A stretch of 63,456 nucleotides of DNA, filler included, from Reticulomyxa filosa (GCA_000512085.1; 23 parts of 23 records of this genome joined end to end with filler, not necessarily neighbours in it), one strand, 5' to 3'. Positions 27,695 to 33,556 are shown, counted from the whole stretch's first letter. Program-made: numbers and translations. Notes: a model not told the origin generated them from the sequence alone.

Positions 27695-27870
27695 NNNNNN
27701 NNNNNNNNNNNNNNNNNNNNNNNNNNNNNNNNNNNNNNTTAATTAATTAANNNNNNNNNNNNNNNNNNNNNNNNNNNNNNNNNNNNNNNNNNNNCAAACA
27801 AACAAACAAACAAAACAAACAAAAAAAAAACAAAAACAACAAAGACGAACAAACTCAAATTATATATTCG

Positions 27871-29264
27871 TTGGCAGATTCAGATCCATATCCATACTAT
27901 CTAAGTGGTTGTATGGCCTATGCAAATGAAAACTGGTCCCAATGTTTGGAGTATTCACAAACAGCTTTAGAGATGAACAGCAATAGCAGCTTGCACAAAC
28001 AATGGAGCTCCTTTTGTAATTATCTGACGGAAGAGTTGGTATACCATGTCCATGTGATGAAATGTGTGTGCTTTCTCAAACTGCAAAAATTGGACAACGC
28101 TTGGCTATGCTTTCAACAACTCTTACCCAATACTTGTCGCTATTTTCAGATTTGCAGTCAAACGTTTGACTTCTCGCATTGCGTTTTTTATGTCCGACTA
28201 GATATCGCCAATCAGGTTCATATCGGACACAAATTCCCTAGTCTTTGGTATTCATTTTTGATTTTTCTACTGGAAACTGGTTTGTTTATTCGTATGTGCA
28301 TGGACTTTTTTTTTTTCATGGCCCCCCCCCCCTTCTCCTTCCTTTTGTCCTCTGGACGTATACATTTTTTTGTTACGTCTTCCTCTTTGTATATTTGTCC
28401 TCATAGACAAATCAGAGCAGGCATATCAATTGGCAAAATATTTGTTGTATCTCAATTATTTAAGCGAAAATGAATCGTTTCAATGCTTGTGGGAGTCAAT
28501 GAAAAGGAAAGTTAGTAATGAAAAGTATGATCTGTGTTTGGACGCAGCGTGGGCGGGAAATCAAGCACGCTTTGTCAATCACAGTGATCATCCAAATTGT
28601 GAGTTGGTAGAAAGATTCATTGGAAAGGAAGAGTGTCATGGTACTGAGGTTTGGATTCGCACACTCCGAGCCATAACAACGAGTTTTTTTTTTTTTTTTT
28701 TTTGTGAGATGTACTTTCTTTGACTTGAAAATTTGGAGTGCTGAACTTTGGAGCCATGAAGTGAAATAAATAAAATAAAAATTTTAATGTATTGTTGATG
28801 CAACGTAGATGAAGAACTGACGATAAATTATGGCAAACAGTATTGGGAAGAGTGCAACAAATCCAAACCATTGAAGCAACGAGACGACCCCTGGCAGGAT
28901 TGTATTTTTACACATGCGGTAATTGACAATTTGTTTAATCACTTAAGCGACCATGTGTTGAAAGAAACATTAAAATATTTGCATTTAGTAACTCCTCAGC
29001 TTTGCGATAAAAACTTTCCAAGGCAAATAGAAATACGAAAGGATCACTATGGCGGATTTGGAGTGTTTGCCAAAGAACGAATTCAATCCTCCTTTTTTTT
29101 TAATGAGATACTCCGGAATTCGCAAAATTGTCAATGAGTATCAAACTTCGGATTCTAGATATGTTGTTAATCTGAAATGTTTGTCACACGTGGATCACGA
29201 AAATCCAGATGCAGATGACAATGAAGATGCTCTTATGACAGAACAGTTTGATACAACCGTCTAA
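27871..29264 (+). CDS. TPR-like plus circularly permuted SET-domain lysine methyltransferase (5' partial)
   Basis: Exons ~27871-28279, 28407-28682, 28809-29264 with phase-1 GT-AG introns; one extra T in the run at 29093-29101. Motif order: LDAAWAGNQARFVNHSDHPNC, EELTINYGKQYW, GGFGVFAKERI, LMRYSG, SRYVVNL. Confidence 0.85.
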
Positions 29265-30550
29265 ACTGAGAGTGAAAGTGATGACTTTTCACTTATAATT
29301 CTTAAATGTTTCTGCTCAATTTTTTTTTTAACAAAAGTTTGACAATATGTTTTAATATTTTAACGAATAATTTAGATGCTCCTTTTTTTGGGACAAAAAT
29401 CCGAAAATATTGTCACTTTTAATGTTTTGAAAATCGTTTTCATTTCTACATTAGCCCTTTACAATGCAGTTAATATCATACACGCAATATTTGTAATTTC
29501 TTTTACATTCTTGGCTAATCGAAAACAATATTAGAAAATACGTTAACACTTTTAGTTTTTGTATTTTCAGAGGCAAAAATGTTTTGATCCATTTTTTTTT
29601 GAAAATCTAATGTTTTATGAACTTTGGTACAATCAAAAACTTGTCTTCATCCGTAGGTAGTTTAGAGAAAAAAGAAACATTGTTTGAAGTGTTTACCGGA
29701 ACAAAAAAAGATGTACGTATTGTATGATATATAAAATATTATGATTTATCTAATTGGTATGATTCACCTTGACAAAATGCTAATTTTTTGTGTTATATGA
29801 ACATTCAAATGATTTGTCAAGCAGATAATCAAAGATTTTGACATTGAGGTCAATGAAAGAGTTTGTGTGTACTTAATCAAAGAACCAACAAAAGTTTAAA
29901 TGATCAAACTTTCCATGTTAGTGCAGAGCTGACAACGTTCAATTGTGAAACACATTCATCTTTTTCTTTCTGTAACGCACTCAACACAAACGAGCATTCA
30001 TTTTTTTTGTTAATTTTTTTTCCCCTTCTTTGGCTATTTGTAGGGACATGTTTTTTAAAGATACGTTGAAATGATTTAATTTTGATATTATAACACTTTT
30101 AAAGCAAAAATGTGCAATACAAAATAGACATTCAACATTTCCTATTGTTACTGTAAAATCAGTTTCAACGTGACTGTTATATTGATGTGTTTTGCCATTC
30201 AACTTTTGAAAAGAAGACAAAGGAATTAATTCAAACAAAAATTTCAACACAATTATTTTAATAAATCAAAGATATTGAATAATTATTTTTAATTATTAAG
30301 ATTAAACAGAATAAAAAGTGTGTTGCAAGTGATAATGTTAGGGGGGTGGGGGGGTATAATTAAATGAAAAAATTGTATTTATTAGGCGAAAGTACGCCCA
30401 ATTATTGCCCATGTAAAGGGCATTTCATTAATATAATTTTTGTTTTTTTTAAAAAATGATTATAATGATTTGTATATAGAAAAATGAGATATTTATATAA
30501 CATGAACAACACTTTTTTTTTTTAAAGTTTAACAAAATTATTTATTTTGC

Positions 30551-30586
30551 ATGACAGAATGATGACAGAATGATGACAGAATGATA
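30551..30586. repeat. 11-bp minisatellite (ATGACAGAATG)x3
   Basis: Direct tandem copies in intergenic DNA. Confidence 0.8.
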
Positions 30587-31240
30587 ACATAATTAAATCA
30601 TTTTTACATTGTATTTTTCAATATGACTATGTCTATAAGTAATCGATACATTTGTAATCTCTTTAATTACATTATTATATTATTTCAATAAATCATCGTT
30701 TTGTATACTTGTGATTTGATTATTGAATGAAAATAACTGACAAAACGGATAAGTAATAGTTCTTTGCTAATCAAAAAATTATTTATTTATCAATGCAGAA
30801 CCAGTTATAAGTATAAGGCATTTAAATGCCAGGTGTTCAATAAATTGTTTTTTCAAAACATGTCAAACACAAAGAGATTTAATATTTCTGACACATATTC
30901 CACAATCTCAGTTCTTCATAAAAAACAATTAAATTTAAGATTCAGCAAAATTGTAAATGCGCTTGGGCAGTGTTAAATAACAACATAAAGCCGTATCTAT
31001 TTGAATACAACTTTTTTTGTCTCAAGTTTATCTCAGAAGTCACTACTTTCAGCTATAAACGTCATGTAATTCTCAAAATGTATGTGAACAAGGTGCAGTA
31101 AAATGTGTTTGTAAATATTCATTGTTTTTGACAGGAGGTGTGTAAACAAAGAGAAAAAAAGCAAGAGAATTTTGAAAGAGATTTTATTTTCAAATTCTTT
31201 ATTTGATTGGAATATTGGTTTTCAATTATTTCAAAAGAAG

Positions 31241-31904
31241 ATGGCAGAAGGACAATCAACTTCGCGCTCTTTTTTGAGCAAAATACCAGGACTTTCACGG
31301 AAAAAAGCGACATCAAATGAAAAGACAAAGATATCGGAGAAGTCTGCCTCAACCCCAGGTACTCCAACGAAGTCGGGAGAAAGTAGCGGAGCAGCGTCGA
31401 AAAGCAGCGGAAAAGAAGAGACCGGGAATGCGAACAAAAGCAAAGGAAGAGTAAAAAGCGAGGAGAAAAATATGGAGCTGGAGCCGGAGGTGAGTTTATA
31501 TCGAAGCAGTAGCGTACCTTTCAAAGGAGGGGACGAAAAGAGCACGAAGGAGGGAACACCTGAGGTGAAAAATGCAGCAAAAACCAAGAACGCAAATGAA
31601 GCGTCAACACCGACATCAGCACCAACAGTAACAACACCAGCAACAACAGTAACAACACCAGCAACAACAGCAACAGCAACAGCATCAGCGTCTACGACAA
31701 ATGAAAGCAATTCAACAGAGGCAATGAAATTGAAAGTAACAAAAACAAAGCAAACACATTGCAAAAAGTCTCAGTCGAGTGATGCTGTGGCGTCTCCACT
31801 AGGAGCACCGTCTGACGAAAAAACCGAAAGTCAAAATGACAATGACAATGATAATGATAATGATAATGACAATGATGATGAGAATGACAATGAGAATGAC
31901 AATG

Positions 31905-31956
<52 letters not shown>

Positions 31957-32760
31957 TGATAATACCAACCAAAAACACCATCATAATCATCATAACAATA
32001 ACAACAAACGAAAGAGTCGATTGGCTCAGACAAGCAGTAACGGAAGACATTTGGGACCTTTGGCGGAAGACCAAAGTGTTTGCGATGAGTGTGACAGTTA
32101 CCATTTAGGCGACGTGGTGTTGTTGAAAGATCGAAGAGAAGGATTGATTCGATACATTGGACCAGTTCATTTTTTAGTCGACACCAGCGCAAACAAAGAT
32201 AAAGATAAAGACAAGGACAAAGAGCCAGCTCCGCCCAAAGAAGAACATACCATTATGTACGGTATCGAATTGTTGGGAATGAGCGTTGGAACACATGACG
32301 GTAATTACATGGGATTAAGATACTTTCGAGTTTTGCAAACCTACTTTTTTATTTTTTGGTCGTTTTTGTGTTACAAAGATTTTTTTTTTTTTTTAAAAAA
32401 AAAAAAAAATGTACACTACGCACATATACACGAAAACTGTACATATGTACTTATCCAATATATTCATTCTGAGGTGGTGTGTTGGTAAAAAAAAAAGAAC
32501 GAATTATATATGCGTGTATATAAATATAAATATGTATATGTATATATGTATGTGTACATGATTTCCATGTAATCACAAGACGTCATCGGAGCGTGCTATT
32601 TTCGTGAAAGAGTCGCTGATCTTGCGTAAAATGACCCCGATGGATTTCTTGCCACCCTCGCATTTGCATCATCAGATCGAAAAACTTCGCAAAGAGCGGC
32701 AGGCCAATAAAACACACGAAAAGCGAAGATCAGCTCCCAAAGTTGTCCCACTTCATGTTA
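31241..32760 (+). CDS. CAP-Gly domain protein (3' partial)
   Basis: LGDVVLLKDRREGLIRYIGPVHF...YGIEL...GTHDGNYMGLRYFR | TSSERAIFVKES; intron 32330-32579; low-complexity N-terminus. Confidence 0.88.
31835..31962 (+). repeat. Coding microsatellite: (ND)n then poly-Asn (AAT)n
   Basis: AATGAC/AATGAT hexamers followed by an AAT run. Confidence 0.95.
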
Positions 32761-33556
32761 AGTTTGGCAAACATAGTCTCTCCTTGTCCCGAGTGTTCGC
32801 TTTCTCTCTCTTCCTTCTGGATCAGCTAATGTACTCGATTCGAGACTAATCATATACGTGTATACATATATCGATACATTTTANNNNNNNNNNNNNNNNN
32901 NNNNNNNNNNNNNNNNNNNNNNNNNNNTTAATTAATTAANNNNNNNNNNNNNNNNNNNNNNNNNNNNNNNNNNNNNNNNNNNNTATCGTTTTATGCGTTC
33001 AGTTTTCTTTGCAACCTACTGTATATTCAATTTCTATTTTTAATTTGCAAACAATTTGCAAATAGCCCAATAGAAATTACCTGCGATCAACACAAAAACA
33101 TTGAGGGAATATTAATCGTCAGATAGAATTGCTTAAATAAATTTTTAAATCAAAATCCAAATTCTTGTCCGATATCGAATCATAAAAGCTTTATATACTA
33201 CCAGAGCCGATTGGCAAAGTATTGTATTAATGAATTAATTGTAAAATGCCACTGCAGTTTCAAAAAGAAAAAGGAAATAAATCAGGTGATCATTGTAATT
33301 TTAAAGACAAAATTCAAAATTTAAATAAGCACTTGAAAATGATTGTTATCTTCAAATGGTCAAATGTCATTTTAAAAAATTTGGATGCAGCTATTGATGC
33401 TTAAGACGAGAACTCGACGAACATATAAAATTAAAACAAAATTTCATTTTGATCTAATGATGAAATATATTAACGAATTACAACAAATAATTCACCAATA
33501 CAATGTATTAATTATTTATTTATAATTTTAATGCAATAAATGATTAAAAAATATAA

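What the first reader, a model, noticed from the sequence alone, without database searches (positions are those of the whole stretch)
28407..29264. Circularly permuted SET domain fused to a TPR-like region
Established: SET domains run motif I (GxG, GxGVFA), II (YxG), III (DA..GN.ARF.NHS..PN), IV (EELT.DY). Seen: the spliced gene has III (28540-28600) and IV (28811-28845) first, a ~65-aa linker, then I (GGFGVFAKERI, 29051) and II (LMRYSG, SRYVVNL), then a stop at 29262. No N-half precedes motif III, which follows directly from the helical TPR-like region, and no C-half follows motif II. So exactly one complement of motifs is present, in order III-IV-I-II, with the SAM-binding NH and catalytic Tyr intact. 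Both introns are phase-consistent. Inference: a natural circular permutation opened in the I-SET region, leaving >130 residues after the strand that forms the SET pseudoknot. I know of no described example.
Basis: partly seen in the sequence, partly recalled or inferred. Interest (0 to 1): 0.88.

Follow-up and report, generated by a model that had tools for sequence, protein, structure and literature searches.

The report
Circularly permuted SET methyltransferase domain, foraminifera
This Reticulomyxa gene belongs to a small foraminiferal protein family whose SET methyltransferase domain has its two halves in swapped order behind a TPR array, an arrangement I found in no paper searched; the copy in this window carries a one-base frame break.

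Summary
One point was missed. Motif I (GGFGVFA) and motif II (LMRYSG, SRYVVNL) lie in different reading frames, separated by one extra T in a T9 run (29093-29101).

The piece is the whole 5089-nt contig behind Reticulomyxa filosa ETO06214.1. The order TPR, motif III, motif IV, a linker of 51-68 residues, motif I, motif II, stop is not an artefact. It recurs in eight other sequences:
- a Nonionella stella protein;
- four uninterrupted ORFs on independent genomic or metagenomic contigs;
- three fragments.

Pfam SET matches these proteins as two partial hits in reversed order, and nothing but TPR lies upstream. A family profile with the halves swapped in silico aligns to a canonical-order SET protein as one hit (36.1 bits). 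The native profile gives two reversed hits.

The two halves, folded as separate chains with SAM, are predicted to pack together (ipSAE 0.64, best control 0.00). Structure searches are weak but return only SET enzymes. Three literature searches found no described permuted SET domain.

The window copy is cut at its 5' end by the contig edge, and its frame break is either a homopolymer error or a recent lesion.

The parts
27795..27870 (.). Start of the contig: low-complexity (CAAA)n-like sequence. Upstream exons of the gene would lie beyond this edge.
   Evidence: the contig of P0001 is 5089 nt, the same length as the piece. Relatives carry about 150-330 more N-terminal residues.
27871..28279 (+). 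Exon 1 (partial gene start): TPR-like helical region. The frame is open from 27871, there is an acceptor-like cag at 27875-27877, and the GenBank model starts at the ATG at 27913.
   Evidence: Weak Pfam TPR_1/TPR_2 hits (E 0.042 and 0.088). Weak collinear BLASTP match to the TPR region of P0007 that starts upstream of the annotated Met (E 0.028).
28280..28406 (+). Intron 1: GT..AG, 127 nt, phase 1. The GenBank model uses an acceptor 9 nt further on, at 28415.
Evidence: Sequence.
28407..28682 (+). Exon 2: last helices of the TPR-like region, followed directly by the SET C-half with motif III (28541-28597; GNQARFVNHS).
   Evidence: Pfam SET 5.5e-08, 33.6 bits, profile 43-94 of 105. PDB hits to motif III of ASH1L, NSD2 and SETD2.
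28683..28808 (+). Intron 2: GT..AG, 126 nt, phase 1.
   Evidence: Sequence. The splice gives ...RAITT-N-EELTINYG, as in P0001.
28809..29098 (+). Exon 3, first frame: motif IV EELTINYG (28811-28846), a conserved linker of about 55-68 residues, then the strand IEIRKD and motif I GGFGVFA (29051 onward).
   Evidence: Aligns over its whole length to the relatives.
29093..29101 (+). T9 homopolymer holding one surplus base, which is the frame break between motif I and motif II.
   Evidence: With eight T's the reading would be IQSSFFLMRYSG, the same length as TIKRNTFIMRYAG in P0008.
29100..29264 (+). Exon 3, second frame: motif II LMRYSG (29100-29117), last strand SRYVVNL (29154-29174), acidic tail, and stop at 29262-29264.
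   Evidence: 38% identity to P0008 over this piece, no internal stop.
28988..29030 (+). The 43-nt 'intron' of GenBank model ETO06214.1. It is most likely a frame patch made by the gene predictor, not a real intron.
   Evidence: P0001 reads ...LKYLHL/KYERITMADLECLPKNEF..., which removes the family-conserved DKxYPxxIExxxDxxGGFG block. The other two introns are 126-127 nt.

Best explanation
The window holds the Reticulomyxa filosa member (ETO06214.1) of a small protein family seen in Foraminifera and marine samples. In this family an N-terminal TPR superhelix is followed by a circularly permuted SET domain. The chain runs: last TPR helix; strand plus motif III (xIDAExFGNQCRFVNHS); motif IV (ELxVxYGxxYW, carrying the tyrosine that aligns with the last Tyr of the ELxFDY motif, the catalytic Tyr of canonical SET enzymes by textbook knowledge); a conserved linker of 51-68 residues; strand plus motif I (GGFG); motif II (RYAG); a final strand (SRYxIx); stop. 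Relative to a canonical SET domain, the new termini lie in the loop where the I-SET insert normally sits, and the old termini are joined by the linker. The inferred mechanism is that the C-terminal segment carrying motifs I and II folds back onto the segment carrying motifs III and IV. This would rebuild the SAM pocket and lysine channel of a SET lysine methyltransferase. The TPR array, attached where I-SET normally lines the substrate groove, would then select the substrate. Three full-length members begin with a PPKKRKL-type basic motif, which suggests a nuclear protein. The most likely origin is tandem duplication of a SET domain followed by loss of the outer halves. The window copy is incomplete at its 5' end because the contig ends, and it carries one surplus T in a T9 run between motifs I and II. 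That break is either a homopolymer assembly error or a very recent frameshift. Shown: the motif order, its conservation, uninterrupted ORFs in the relatives, reversed collinearity with canonical SET domains, and the TPR fold of the N-terminus in a predicted model. Inferred: the fold, SAM binding, enzymatic activity, nuclear location and evolutionary route.
For: Identity and family:
- An HMMER search of 1.84 billion representatives with exon 3 found 8 proteins. Six of them match the query from about residue 1-8 to about residue 94-97, that is from motif IV through the linker to motif I.
- Sources are R. filosa ETO06214.1, Nonionella stella (EukProt), a contig of the unbinned metagenome associated with Globobulimina, Tara scaffolds, a Logan assembly, and fragments built from Tara Oceans runs.

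Motif order:
- Four contigs each carry one uninterrupted ORF with the order III, IV, I, II, then a stop. Each motif occurs once in six frames.
- In-frame stops lie 2 codons upstream of the ATG in L001 and L004. In L001 the next gene starts 110 nt after the stop.

Comparison with canonical SET:
- Pfam SET: P0008 residues 321-415 match profile 52-105 (2.3e-09), and residues 452-481 match profile 1-30 (0.0027). Five other C-terminal pieces hit profile 1 to about 30 (5.1e-05 to 0.11), two of them above the curated cut-off. P0008 residues 1-320 give only TPR hits.
- BLASTP against the canonical-order SET protein P0010 (a single full Pfam SET hit, profile 2-105): domain residues 23-96 match 156-230, and 155-193 match 101-139.
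- Swap test: the native family HMM gives two reversed hits (28.0 and -1.2 bits). The swapped HMM gives one hit covering 14-132 of 133 positions, at 36.1 bits.
- PDB profile search: EHMT2 at 5.9e-06, with profile 16-89 matching chain 172-240 and profile 148-175 matching chain 122-149. For KMT2C the best stretch is the N-half.

Structure:
- The full-length AF2 model has confident helices over residues 41-310, and only about 10 residues separate the last helix from motif III. Foldseek matches that region to TPR superhelices (6.9e-05).
- All top-50 Foldseek and VIA-align matches of the domain model are SET enzymes.
- The halves folded as two chains with SAM gave ipSAE 0.64 against a best control of 0.00. 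The three runs agree in at least 85% of their contacts, and the partner's pLDDT is 71-73. That mark was reached by 51 of 78 solved complexes and 2 of 108 mismatched pairs. Both terminal strands (316-334 and 484-493) lie in the predicted interface.

Window:
- Three pieces tile the family alignment with exactly one surplus base.
Against: - The domain-level AF2 model has only middling confidence (mean pLDDT 60.7, pTM 0.59).
- Structural matches to SET are weak (Foldseek E at least 0.017, VIA-align Z at most 4.0). Sequential aligners cannot confirm a permuted topology, and I had no model coordinates for a non-sequential alignment.
- The N-half hits are individually marginal (E 5e-05 to 0.11), and the family is small (nine sequences, four full length plus P0002, which may lack its N-terminus).
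- The complex test can pass 'from memory' of solved SET domains, and its calibration held no ligand.
- P0002 has D in place of the H of the NH motif.
- No biochemical data exist.
Confidence: 0.8

Rival explanations
1. The order is an artefact of assembly, splicing or annotation. On this reading it is really an ordinary or tandem SET gene whose other halves lie off the contig, or a misjoin between motif IV and motif I.
For: The contig is short (5089 nt) and starts 76 nt before the open frame. The GenBank model contains an implausible 43-nt intron. There is a frame break between motifs I and II.
Against: Motif IV, the linker and motif I lie in one exon and one frame in the window. The same order sits in four uninterrupted ORFs from independent assemblies and in a Nonionella stella protein. 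All end 3-35 residues after the SRYxI strand, and none has a second copy of any motif in any frame. In L001 the next gene starts 110 nt after the stop.
Confidence: 0.03
2. The C-terminal GGFG...RYAG...SRY segment is not the missing N-half of the fold. On this reading it is an unrelated conserved tail, and the protein has only a half SET domain that is non-catalytic or is completed in trans by another protein.
For: Single N-half Pfam hits are marginal (0.11 to 5e-05). AF2 confidence for the last 28 residues is low. No coordinate-level check was possible.
Against: Every C-terminal piece hits the same profile positions (1 to about 30) at the same place in the protein. The PDB profile search finds N-halves of KMT2C, NSD2/3 and EHMT2 with that segment. 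The swapped profile gains about 8 bits as one continuous hit. The two halves are predicted to pack with about 182 contacts (ipSAE 0.64 against 0.00). Residues G154, G156, Y172 and G174 of alignment A3 are invariant.
Confidence: 0.07
3. The permuted halves complete each other between two protomers as a domain-swapped dimer, rather than within one chain.
For: A long, partly low-confidence linker of 51-68 residues separates the halves. The two-chain prediction shows only that the halves fit each other, not whether this happens in cis or in trans.
Against: Single-chain AF2 models place confident strands of both halves within one chain at pTM 0.59. Nothing so far requires dimerisation.
Confidence: 0.08
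4. This concerns the window copy only. The R. filosa gene is a pseudogene, truly frameshifted at the T9 run so that the protein ends at 29135-29137 without motif II, and is not a sequencing error.
For: The deposited sequence has the surplus base. No other R. filosa family member was found. No reads could be inspected.
Against: The 54 codons after the break keep the family frame without a stop. They end where the family ends and are at least as conserved as the rest (38% identity to P0008, against 31-33% for the earlier pieces). Coding-like G+C persists to about 29290 and then drops. Homopolymer runs are a classic site of assembly error, which is my own knowledge and not tested here.
Confidence: 0.35

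Closest known systems
Canonical SET-domain lysine methyltransferases (Pfam PF00856; the best solved matches are EHMT2/G9a, KMT2C, NSD1-3, ASH1L, SETD2 and SETD8)
   Same: All four signature motifs are present (GxG; YxG; GNxxRFxNHS; ELxxxY followed by G..(Y/F)W as in G9a). Sequence similarity to both halves is significant. Structure searches return SET enzymes only.
   Different: The linear order is C-half then N-half. The chain begins and ends where I-SET normally lies, and a conserved linker of 51-68 residues joins the old C-terminus to the old N-terminus. There are no Cys-rich pre-SET or post-SET modules. The NHSC cysteine is replaced.
P0010, a canonical-order SET plus ubiquitin-like protein from a JGI metagenome contig (Ga0314669_10146366)
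   Same: It shares the IDAEHFGN-x-RF signature and the VxYGEE-FW ending. It is the only canonical-order relative found by the degenerate-pattern scan of metagenome contigs.
   Different: Its order is the normal I-II-III-IV, seen as one full Pfam hit (profile 2-105). It has a 16-residue loop where the permuted family has its termini, no TPR region, and a C-terminal ubiquitin-like domain.
SMYD family (SET split by a MYND finger, with a C-terminal TPR-like domain)
   Same: A SET domain combined with a TPR-like helical array that could wall the substrate groove. SMYD2 and SMYD3 top the VIA-align list, though weakly (Z 4.0).
   Different: SMYD keeps the canonical order with an insertion. Its TPR-like domain is C-terminal and it has a MYND zinc finger. 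Here there is no MYND hit, the TPR is N-terminal, and the halves are swapped.
Circularly permuted Rossmann-fold DNA/RNA methyltransferases
   Same: These are natural circular permutations of a SAM-dependent methyltransferase domain in which the motif order changes while the fold and SAM binding are kept (PMC1282579).
   Different: The fold is unrelated (class I Rossmann, not the SET beta-clip with its pseudoknot), and the substrates differ.

Membership tests
SET domain superfamily (PF00856) | Profile match above Pfam's gathering score | tested here: met
   Window exon 2 scores 33.6 bits against 22.4. P0008 scores 55.9 bits.
SET domain superfamily (PF00856) | C-half motifs: RFxNHS (SAM contact) and ELxxxY (the Tyr aligning with the catalytic Tyr) | tested here: met
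   The window has ARFVNHS and EELTINY. These are invariant in alignment A3. P0002 has ND in place of NH.
SET domain superfamily (PF00856) | N-half motifs GxG and YxG | tested here: met
   GGFG and RY(A/S)G are present, but they lie after the C-half. Pfam profile 1 to about 30 is hit by six C-terminal pieces (5.1e-05 to 0.11), and PDB N-halves are matched. In the window the two motifs lie in different frames.
SET domain superfamily (PF00856) | Canonical linear order: N-SET, I-SET, C-SET | tested here: not met
   The order is reversed in the window and in all relatives. It is therefore a permuted variant of the superfamily, not a canonical member.
SET domain superfamily (PF00856) | SET fold with pseudoknot, both halves packed around SAM | tested here: inconclusive
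   AF2 domain model: pLDDT 60.7, pTM 0.59. Foldseek and VIA-align hits are all SET but weak. The halves are predicted to pack (ipSAE 0.64, best control 0.00; the mark was reached by 51 of 78 solved complexes and 2 of 108 mismatched pairs). No coordinates were available for a topology check.
SET domain superfamily (PF00856) | SAM-dependent lysine methyltransferase activity | not testable with these tools
   This needs a protein assay.
Tetratricopeptide repeat (TPR) proteins | Arrays of helix-turn-helix repeats that match TPR profiles or structures | tested here: met
   For the relative P0008: TPR_2 at 6e-05, which is below the gathering score; 14 confident helices over residues 41-310; Foldseek hits to consensus TPR superhelices at 6.9e-05. 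For window exon 1 there are only weak hits (0.042).
SMYD family | MYND zinc finger inserted in the SET domain, and a C-terminal TPR-like domain | tested here: not met
   There is no MYND hit in P0008 at E up to 10, and the TPR is N-terminal.

The most novel reading that the evidence does not exclude
This is the first natural circular permutant of the SET (beta-clip, pseudoknotted) methyltransferase fold. It would be an active, nuclear lysine methyltransferase conserved across Foraminifera, from monothalamids to rotaliids. The permutation would place a TPR array exactly at the I-SET position, so that the repeat domain forms the substrate groove. Half of the catalytic core would have to dock after the chain has passed through the pseudoknot loop.
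Probability: 0.5. Interest if true: 0.8.

Novelty: new variant of a known kind. Interest (0 to 1): 0.72.

Why it matters
SET domains are among the most studied chromatin enzymes, and their motif order is treated as fixed. A conserved natural permutant would matter in three ways:
- It shows that the pseudoknotted SET core tolerates new termini at the I-SET loop, which is useful for protein engineering and for folding studies of knotted or pseudoknotted proteins.
- It gives a worked example of the duplication-and-truncation route to permutation in a fold that is itself thought to be an internal duplication.
- It shows why profile-based annotation under-calls such proteins. Pfam sees only a 'weak' or partial SET, and the GenBank model of this gene destroys motif I.

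It would also add a lineage-specific candidate chromatin or protein methyltransferase to Foraminifera, whose nuclear biology is little known.

Tried and rejected
No read-level check of the T9 run or of splicing was therefore possible, and read laying was not used.
- The joined window protein was never built, searched or folded.
- Pfam on window exon 3 and on the frame-B piece gave nothing, because the frame break splits the stretch matching profile positions 1-30.
- A metagenome scan with the 11-row alignment failed for lack of a conserved stretch. With 5 rows it returned only the known Globobulimina-associated contig plus one canonical-order SET.
- Word-based homologue searches added only P0009, nothing for the canonical relative beyond itself, and nothing for P0001.
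- Foldseek, VIA-align and ESM Atlas shape searches gave only weak canonical SET matches. They found no permuted look-alike cluster. Atlas features say 'SET' and nothing more.
- Literature: three searches for a permuted SET domain found only permuted Rossmann-fold methyltransferases and unrelated uses of the words. The R. filosa genome paper is not in the library, so the sequencing platform was not checked.
- Downstream exon: I considered that a downstream exon might supply a second motif III-IV. No such motif exists in any frame of 29265-32883, and G+C drops to intergenic levels after about 29290.
- Cryptic upstream N-half: in P0008 the helices run to residue 310 and motif III starts at about residue 321, which leaves no room for one.

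Full report
**What is in the window**

The piece 27795-32883 is a complete 5089-nt contig of Reticulomyxa filosa. Its annotated product is ETO06214.1, 'SET domain-containing protein' (P0001, 348 aa).

On the + strand the reading is as follows:
- an open frame from 27871, preceded by an acceptor-like cag at 27875-27877;
- an exon to 28279;
- a 127-nt GT..AG intron;
- an exon 28407-28682;
- a 126-nt GT..AG intron;
- a last exon from 28809.

Exon 2 ends a helical region and runs straight into SET motif III. It scores Pfam SET 5.5e-08, 33.6 bits, profile 43-94 of 105. The best solved matches are motif III of ASH1L, NSD2 and SETD2.

Exon 3 starts with EELTINYGKQYW (motif IV). It continues through about 68 residues to IEIRKDHYGGFGVFAKERI, which is the first strand plus motif I. 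A six-frame scan finds each SET motif only once in the piece and nothing SET-like in 29265-32883. G+C falls from about 0.36 to 0.20-0.30 after about 29290.

The frame carrying motifs IV and I stops at 29135-29137. LMRYSG and SRYVVNL are in the next frame, in ORF 29049-29264.

Aligned with relatives, three window pieces tile the family alignment end to end: exon 2, 28811-29098 and 29100-29261. So exactly one base of the T9 run 29093-29101 is surplus. With eight T's the text would read IQSSFFLMRYSG, the same length as TIKRNTFIMRYAG in the Nonionella protein.

The GenBank model hides the problem with a 43-nt 'intron' (28988-29030). This removes the conserved DKxYPxxIExxxDxxGGFG block and reads 23 codons (KYERIT...NPPFF) in the wrong frame. 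The other introns of this gene are 126-127 nt.

The segment after the break has no stop for 54 codons. It ends where the family ends and is as conserved as the rest (38% identity to P0008, against 31-33% for the earlier pieces). I therefore lean toward a homopolymer error or a very recent lesion.

I did not build, search or fold the joined window protein.

**The order is a family trait, not an artefact**

An exhaustive HMMER search with exon 3 found eight proteins. Six match the query from about residue 1-8 to about residue 94-97, that is from motif IV through the linker to motif I. A further search added P0009.

All full-length members have the same layout:
- a TPR-like N-terminus;
- xIDAExFGNQCRFVNHS;
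- ELxVxYGxxYW;
- a linker of 51-68 residues with invariant residues (W, FxF(T/S)H, H, DKxYP);
- GGFG;
- RYAGIRK;
- SRYxIx;
- a stop 3-35 residues later.

Their sources are listed below.

| Protein | Length | Source |
|---|---|---|
| P0008 | 498 aa | Nonionella stella, EukProt |
| P0007 | 614 aa | Contig PJEL010027523.1, from the unbinned metagenome associated with Globobulimina (PMC6783311) |
| P0002, P0009 | 471 and 654 aa | Two Tara metagenome scaffolds |
| P0005 | 507 aa | A Logan assembly |
| P0003, P0006 | 117 and 195 aa | Fragments assembled from Tara Oceans runs |
| P0004 | 85 aa | A JGI fragment |

On the four genomic contigs the gene is one uninterrupted ORF. Each motif occurs once in six frames, in the order III, IV, I, II. 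In L001 and L004 an in-frame stop lies two codons before the ATG. In L001 an unrelated glycosyltransferase gene starts 110 nt after the stop.

For the window itself the upstream side cannot be tested, because the contig starts 76 nt before the frame. Exon 1 aligns weakly to the TPR region of P0007 and begins upstream of the annotated Met. The relatives have 150-330 more N-terminal residues. The R. filosa gene is therefore probably cut at its 5' end.

**Homology of both halves to canonical SET, in reversed order**

Pfam SET:
- P0008 residues 321-415 match profile 52-105 (2.3e-09).
- P0008 residues 452-481 match profile 1-30 (0.0027).
- The C-terminal pieces of five other members hit profile 1 to about 30 at the same place (5.1e-05 to 0.11), two of them above the curated cut-off.
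- P0008 residues 1-320 give only TPR families.

A family profile searched against solved structures gives EHMT2/G9a at 5.9e-06. Profile 16-89 matches chain 172-240, and profile 148-175 matches chain 122-149. For KMT2C and NSD2/3 the best stretch is the N-half.

The metagenome scan also turned up a canonical-order relative that shares the IDAEHFGN signature. This is P0010, which gives one full Pfam SET hit (profile 2-105) plus a ubiquitin-like domain. BLASTP against it is reversed: residues 23-96 match 156-230 (8e-08), and 155-193 match 101-139 (0.004).

- The native family HMM gives two reversed hits on P0010 (28.0 and -1.2 bits).
- The HMM of the swapped halves gives a single hit over 14-132 of 133 positions (36.1 bits).
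- In that hit the family's C-terminal tail plus N-terminal lead span the 16-residue loop of P0010 with only a 4-residue gap.

**Structure**

The AF2 model of P0008 residues 299-498 (11-row alignment) is middling, with pLDDT 60.7 and pTM 0.59. It is confident over motifs III-IV (blocks at 76-90) and over motifs I-II (84-90).

Foldseek and VIA-align return only SET enzymes in the top 50, but weakly (E at least 0.017, TM about 0.3, Z at most 4.0). A sequential aligner would be expected to do this on a permuted fold, but the result is no proof. The Atlas shape search likewise gave only canonical SET clusters, at TM 0.31.

The full-length model (pLDDT 73.5) shows 14 confident helices over residues 41-310, and motif III starts about 10 residues later. 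This leaves no room for a cryptic N-half. The helical part matches consensus TPR superhelices and APC/C TPR subunits (6.9e-05).

As a complementation test I folded P0008 residues 312-400 and 436-498 as separate chains, with SAM riding along:
- ipSAE was 0.64, and the best of three controls was 0.00.
- The three runs agree in at least 85% of their contacts, and the partner's pLDDT was 71-73.
- There were about 182 contacts.
- The mark was reached by 51 of 78 solved complexes and 2 of 108 mismatched pairs. The calibration held no ligand.

The predicted interface includes the first strand of the first half (316-334) and the last strand of the second half (484-493). That is, the new termini sit together, as a circular permutation requires. 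This pass may reflect the model's memory of SET domains. It supports likeness to the SET fold, not function.

**Most likely working**

The following is inferred. The C-terminal segment with motifs I-II folds back on the segment with motifs III-IV and restores the SAM pocket (GxG, YxG, NH) and the lysine channel (the Tyr of ELxVxY). The pseudoknot, with motif IV threading under the motif III loop, stays local. However, the threaded tail now contains half of the core.

The TPR array is attached at the point where I-SET normally lines the peptide groove, so it probably provides substrate recognition. A PPKKRKL-type motif at the N-terminus of P0007, P0008 and P0009 suggests a nuclear location.

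The family spans a freshwater monothalamid (Reticulomyxa) and a rotaliid (Nonionella; the P0007 contig comes from a Globobulimina-associated sample). The event is therefore old within Foraminifera. Duplication of a SET domain followed by loss of the outer halves is the simplest route.

**Novelty**

Three full-text searches found no report of a permuted SET domain. The hits concern Rossmann-fold methyltransferases or unrelated senses of the words. The library is incomplete, so this is absence of evidence.

I rate the finding a new variant of a known kind: a member of the SET superfamily by sequence that fails the canonical-order criterion.

**Verdict**

- Observation: confirmed except for the overlooked frame break.
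- Interpretation: supported at family level.
- Still open: the fold, the activity, and whether the window copy is intact.

Noticed in passing
window 31241-32344 and about 32590-32850 (+): The neighbouring gene encodes a Ser/Thr/Asn-rich protein with long poly-Asn and (Asn-Asp)n tracts. It has a C-terminal CAP-Gly domain (Pfam 7.8e-08, profile 2-52 of 65), which appears to be interrupted by an AT-rich intron near 32340-32590.
   Followed up: partly
window 28988-29030: GenBank model ETO06214.1 uses a 43-nt GT..AG 'intron' that only serves to change frame. Its start codon (27913) and its intron-1 acceptor (28415 rather than 28406) also look less consistent with the family alignment.
   Followed up: partly
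family alignment A1 (P0008 residues H406 and H428) and the Cys of the PNC/VNC motif (window 28598-28600): Two histidines in the linker are invariant in all nine sequences, and the Cys after motif III is conserved. Together they might form a metal site standing in for the missing Cys-rich post-SET. This is pure speculation and was not tested.
   Followed up: no
L006 71-1048 (Ga0314669_10146366; P0010): A canonical-order SET domain carrying the same IDAEHFGN signature is fused to a C-terminal ubiquitin-like domain (Pfam SET 4.5e-11, ubiquitin 4.9e-05). The contig looks G+C-rich, so the organism is probably different. It is a possible outgroup for dating the permutation.
   Followed up: partly
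P0002 (L003 2549): One Tara member has RFVND instead of RFVNH, and it has a 45-residue insertion between motifs III and IV. It may be a catalytically degenerate paralogue.
   Followed up: no
window 28683-28704, 32379-32409 and elsewhere: Long homopolymer runs (T about 20, and T15 followed by A15) are frequent in the introns and spacers of this contig. This is the kind of context in which run-length errors are common.
   Followed up: no
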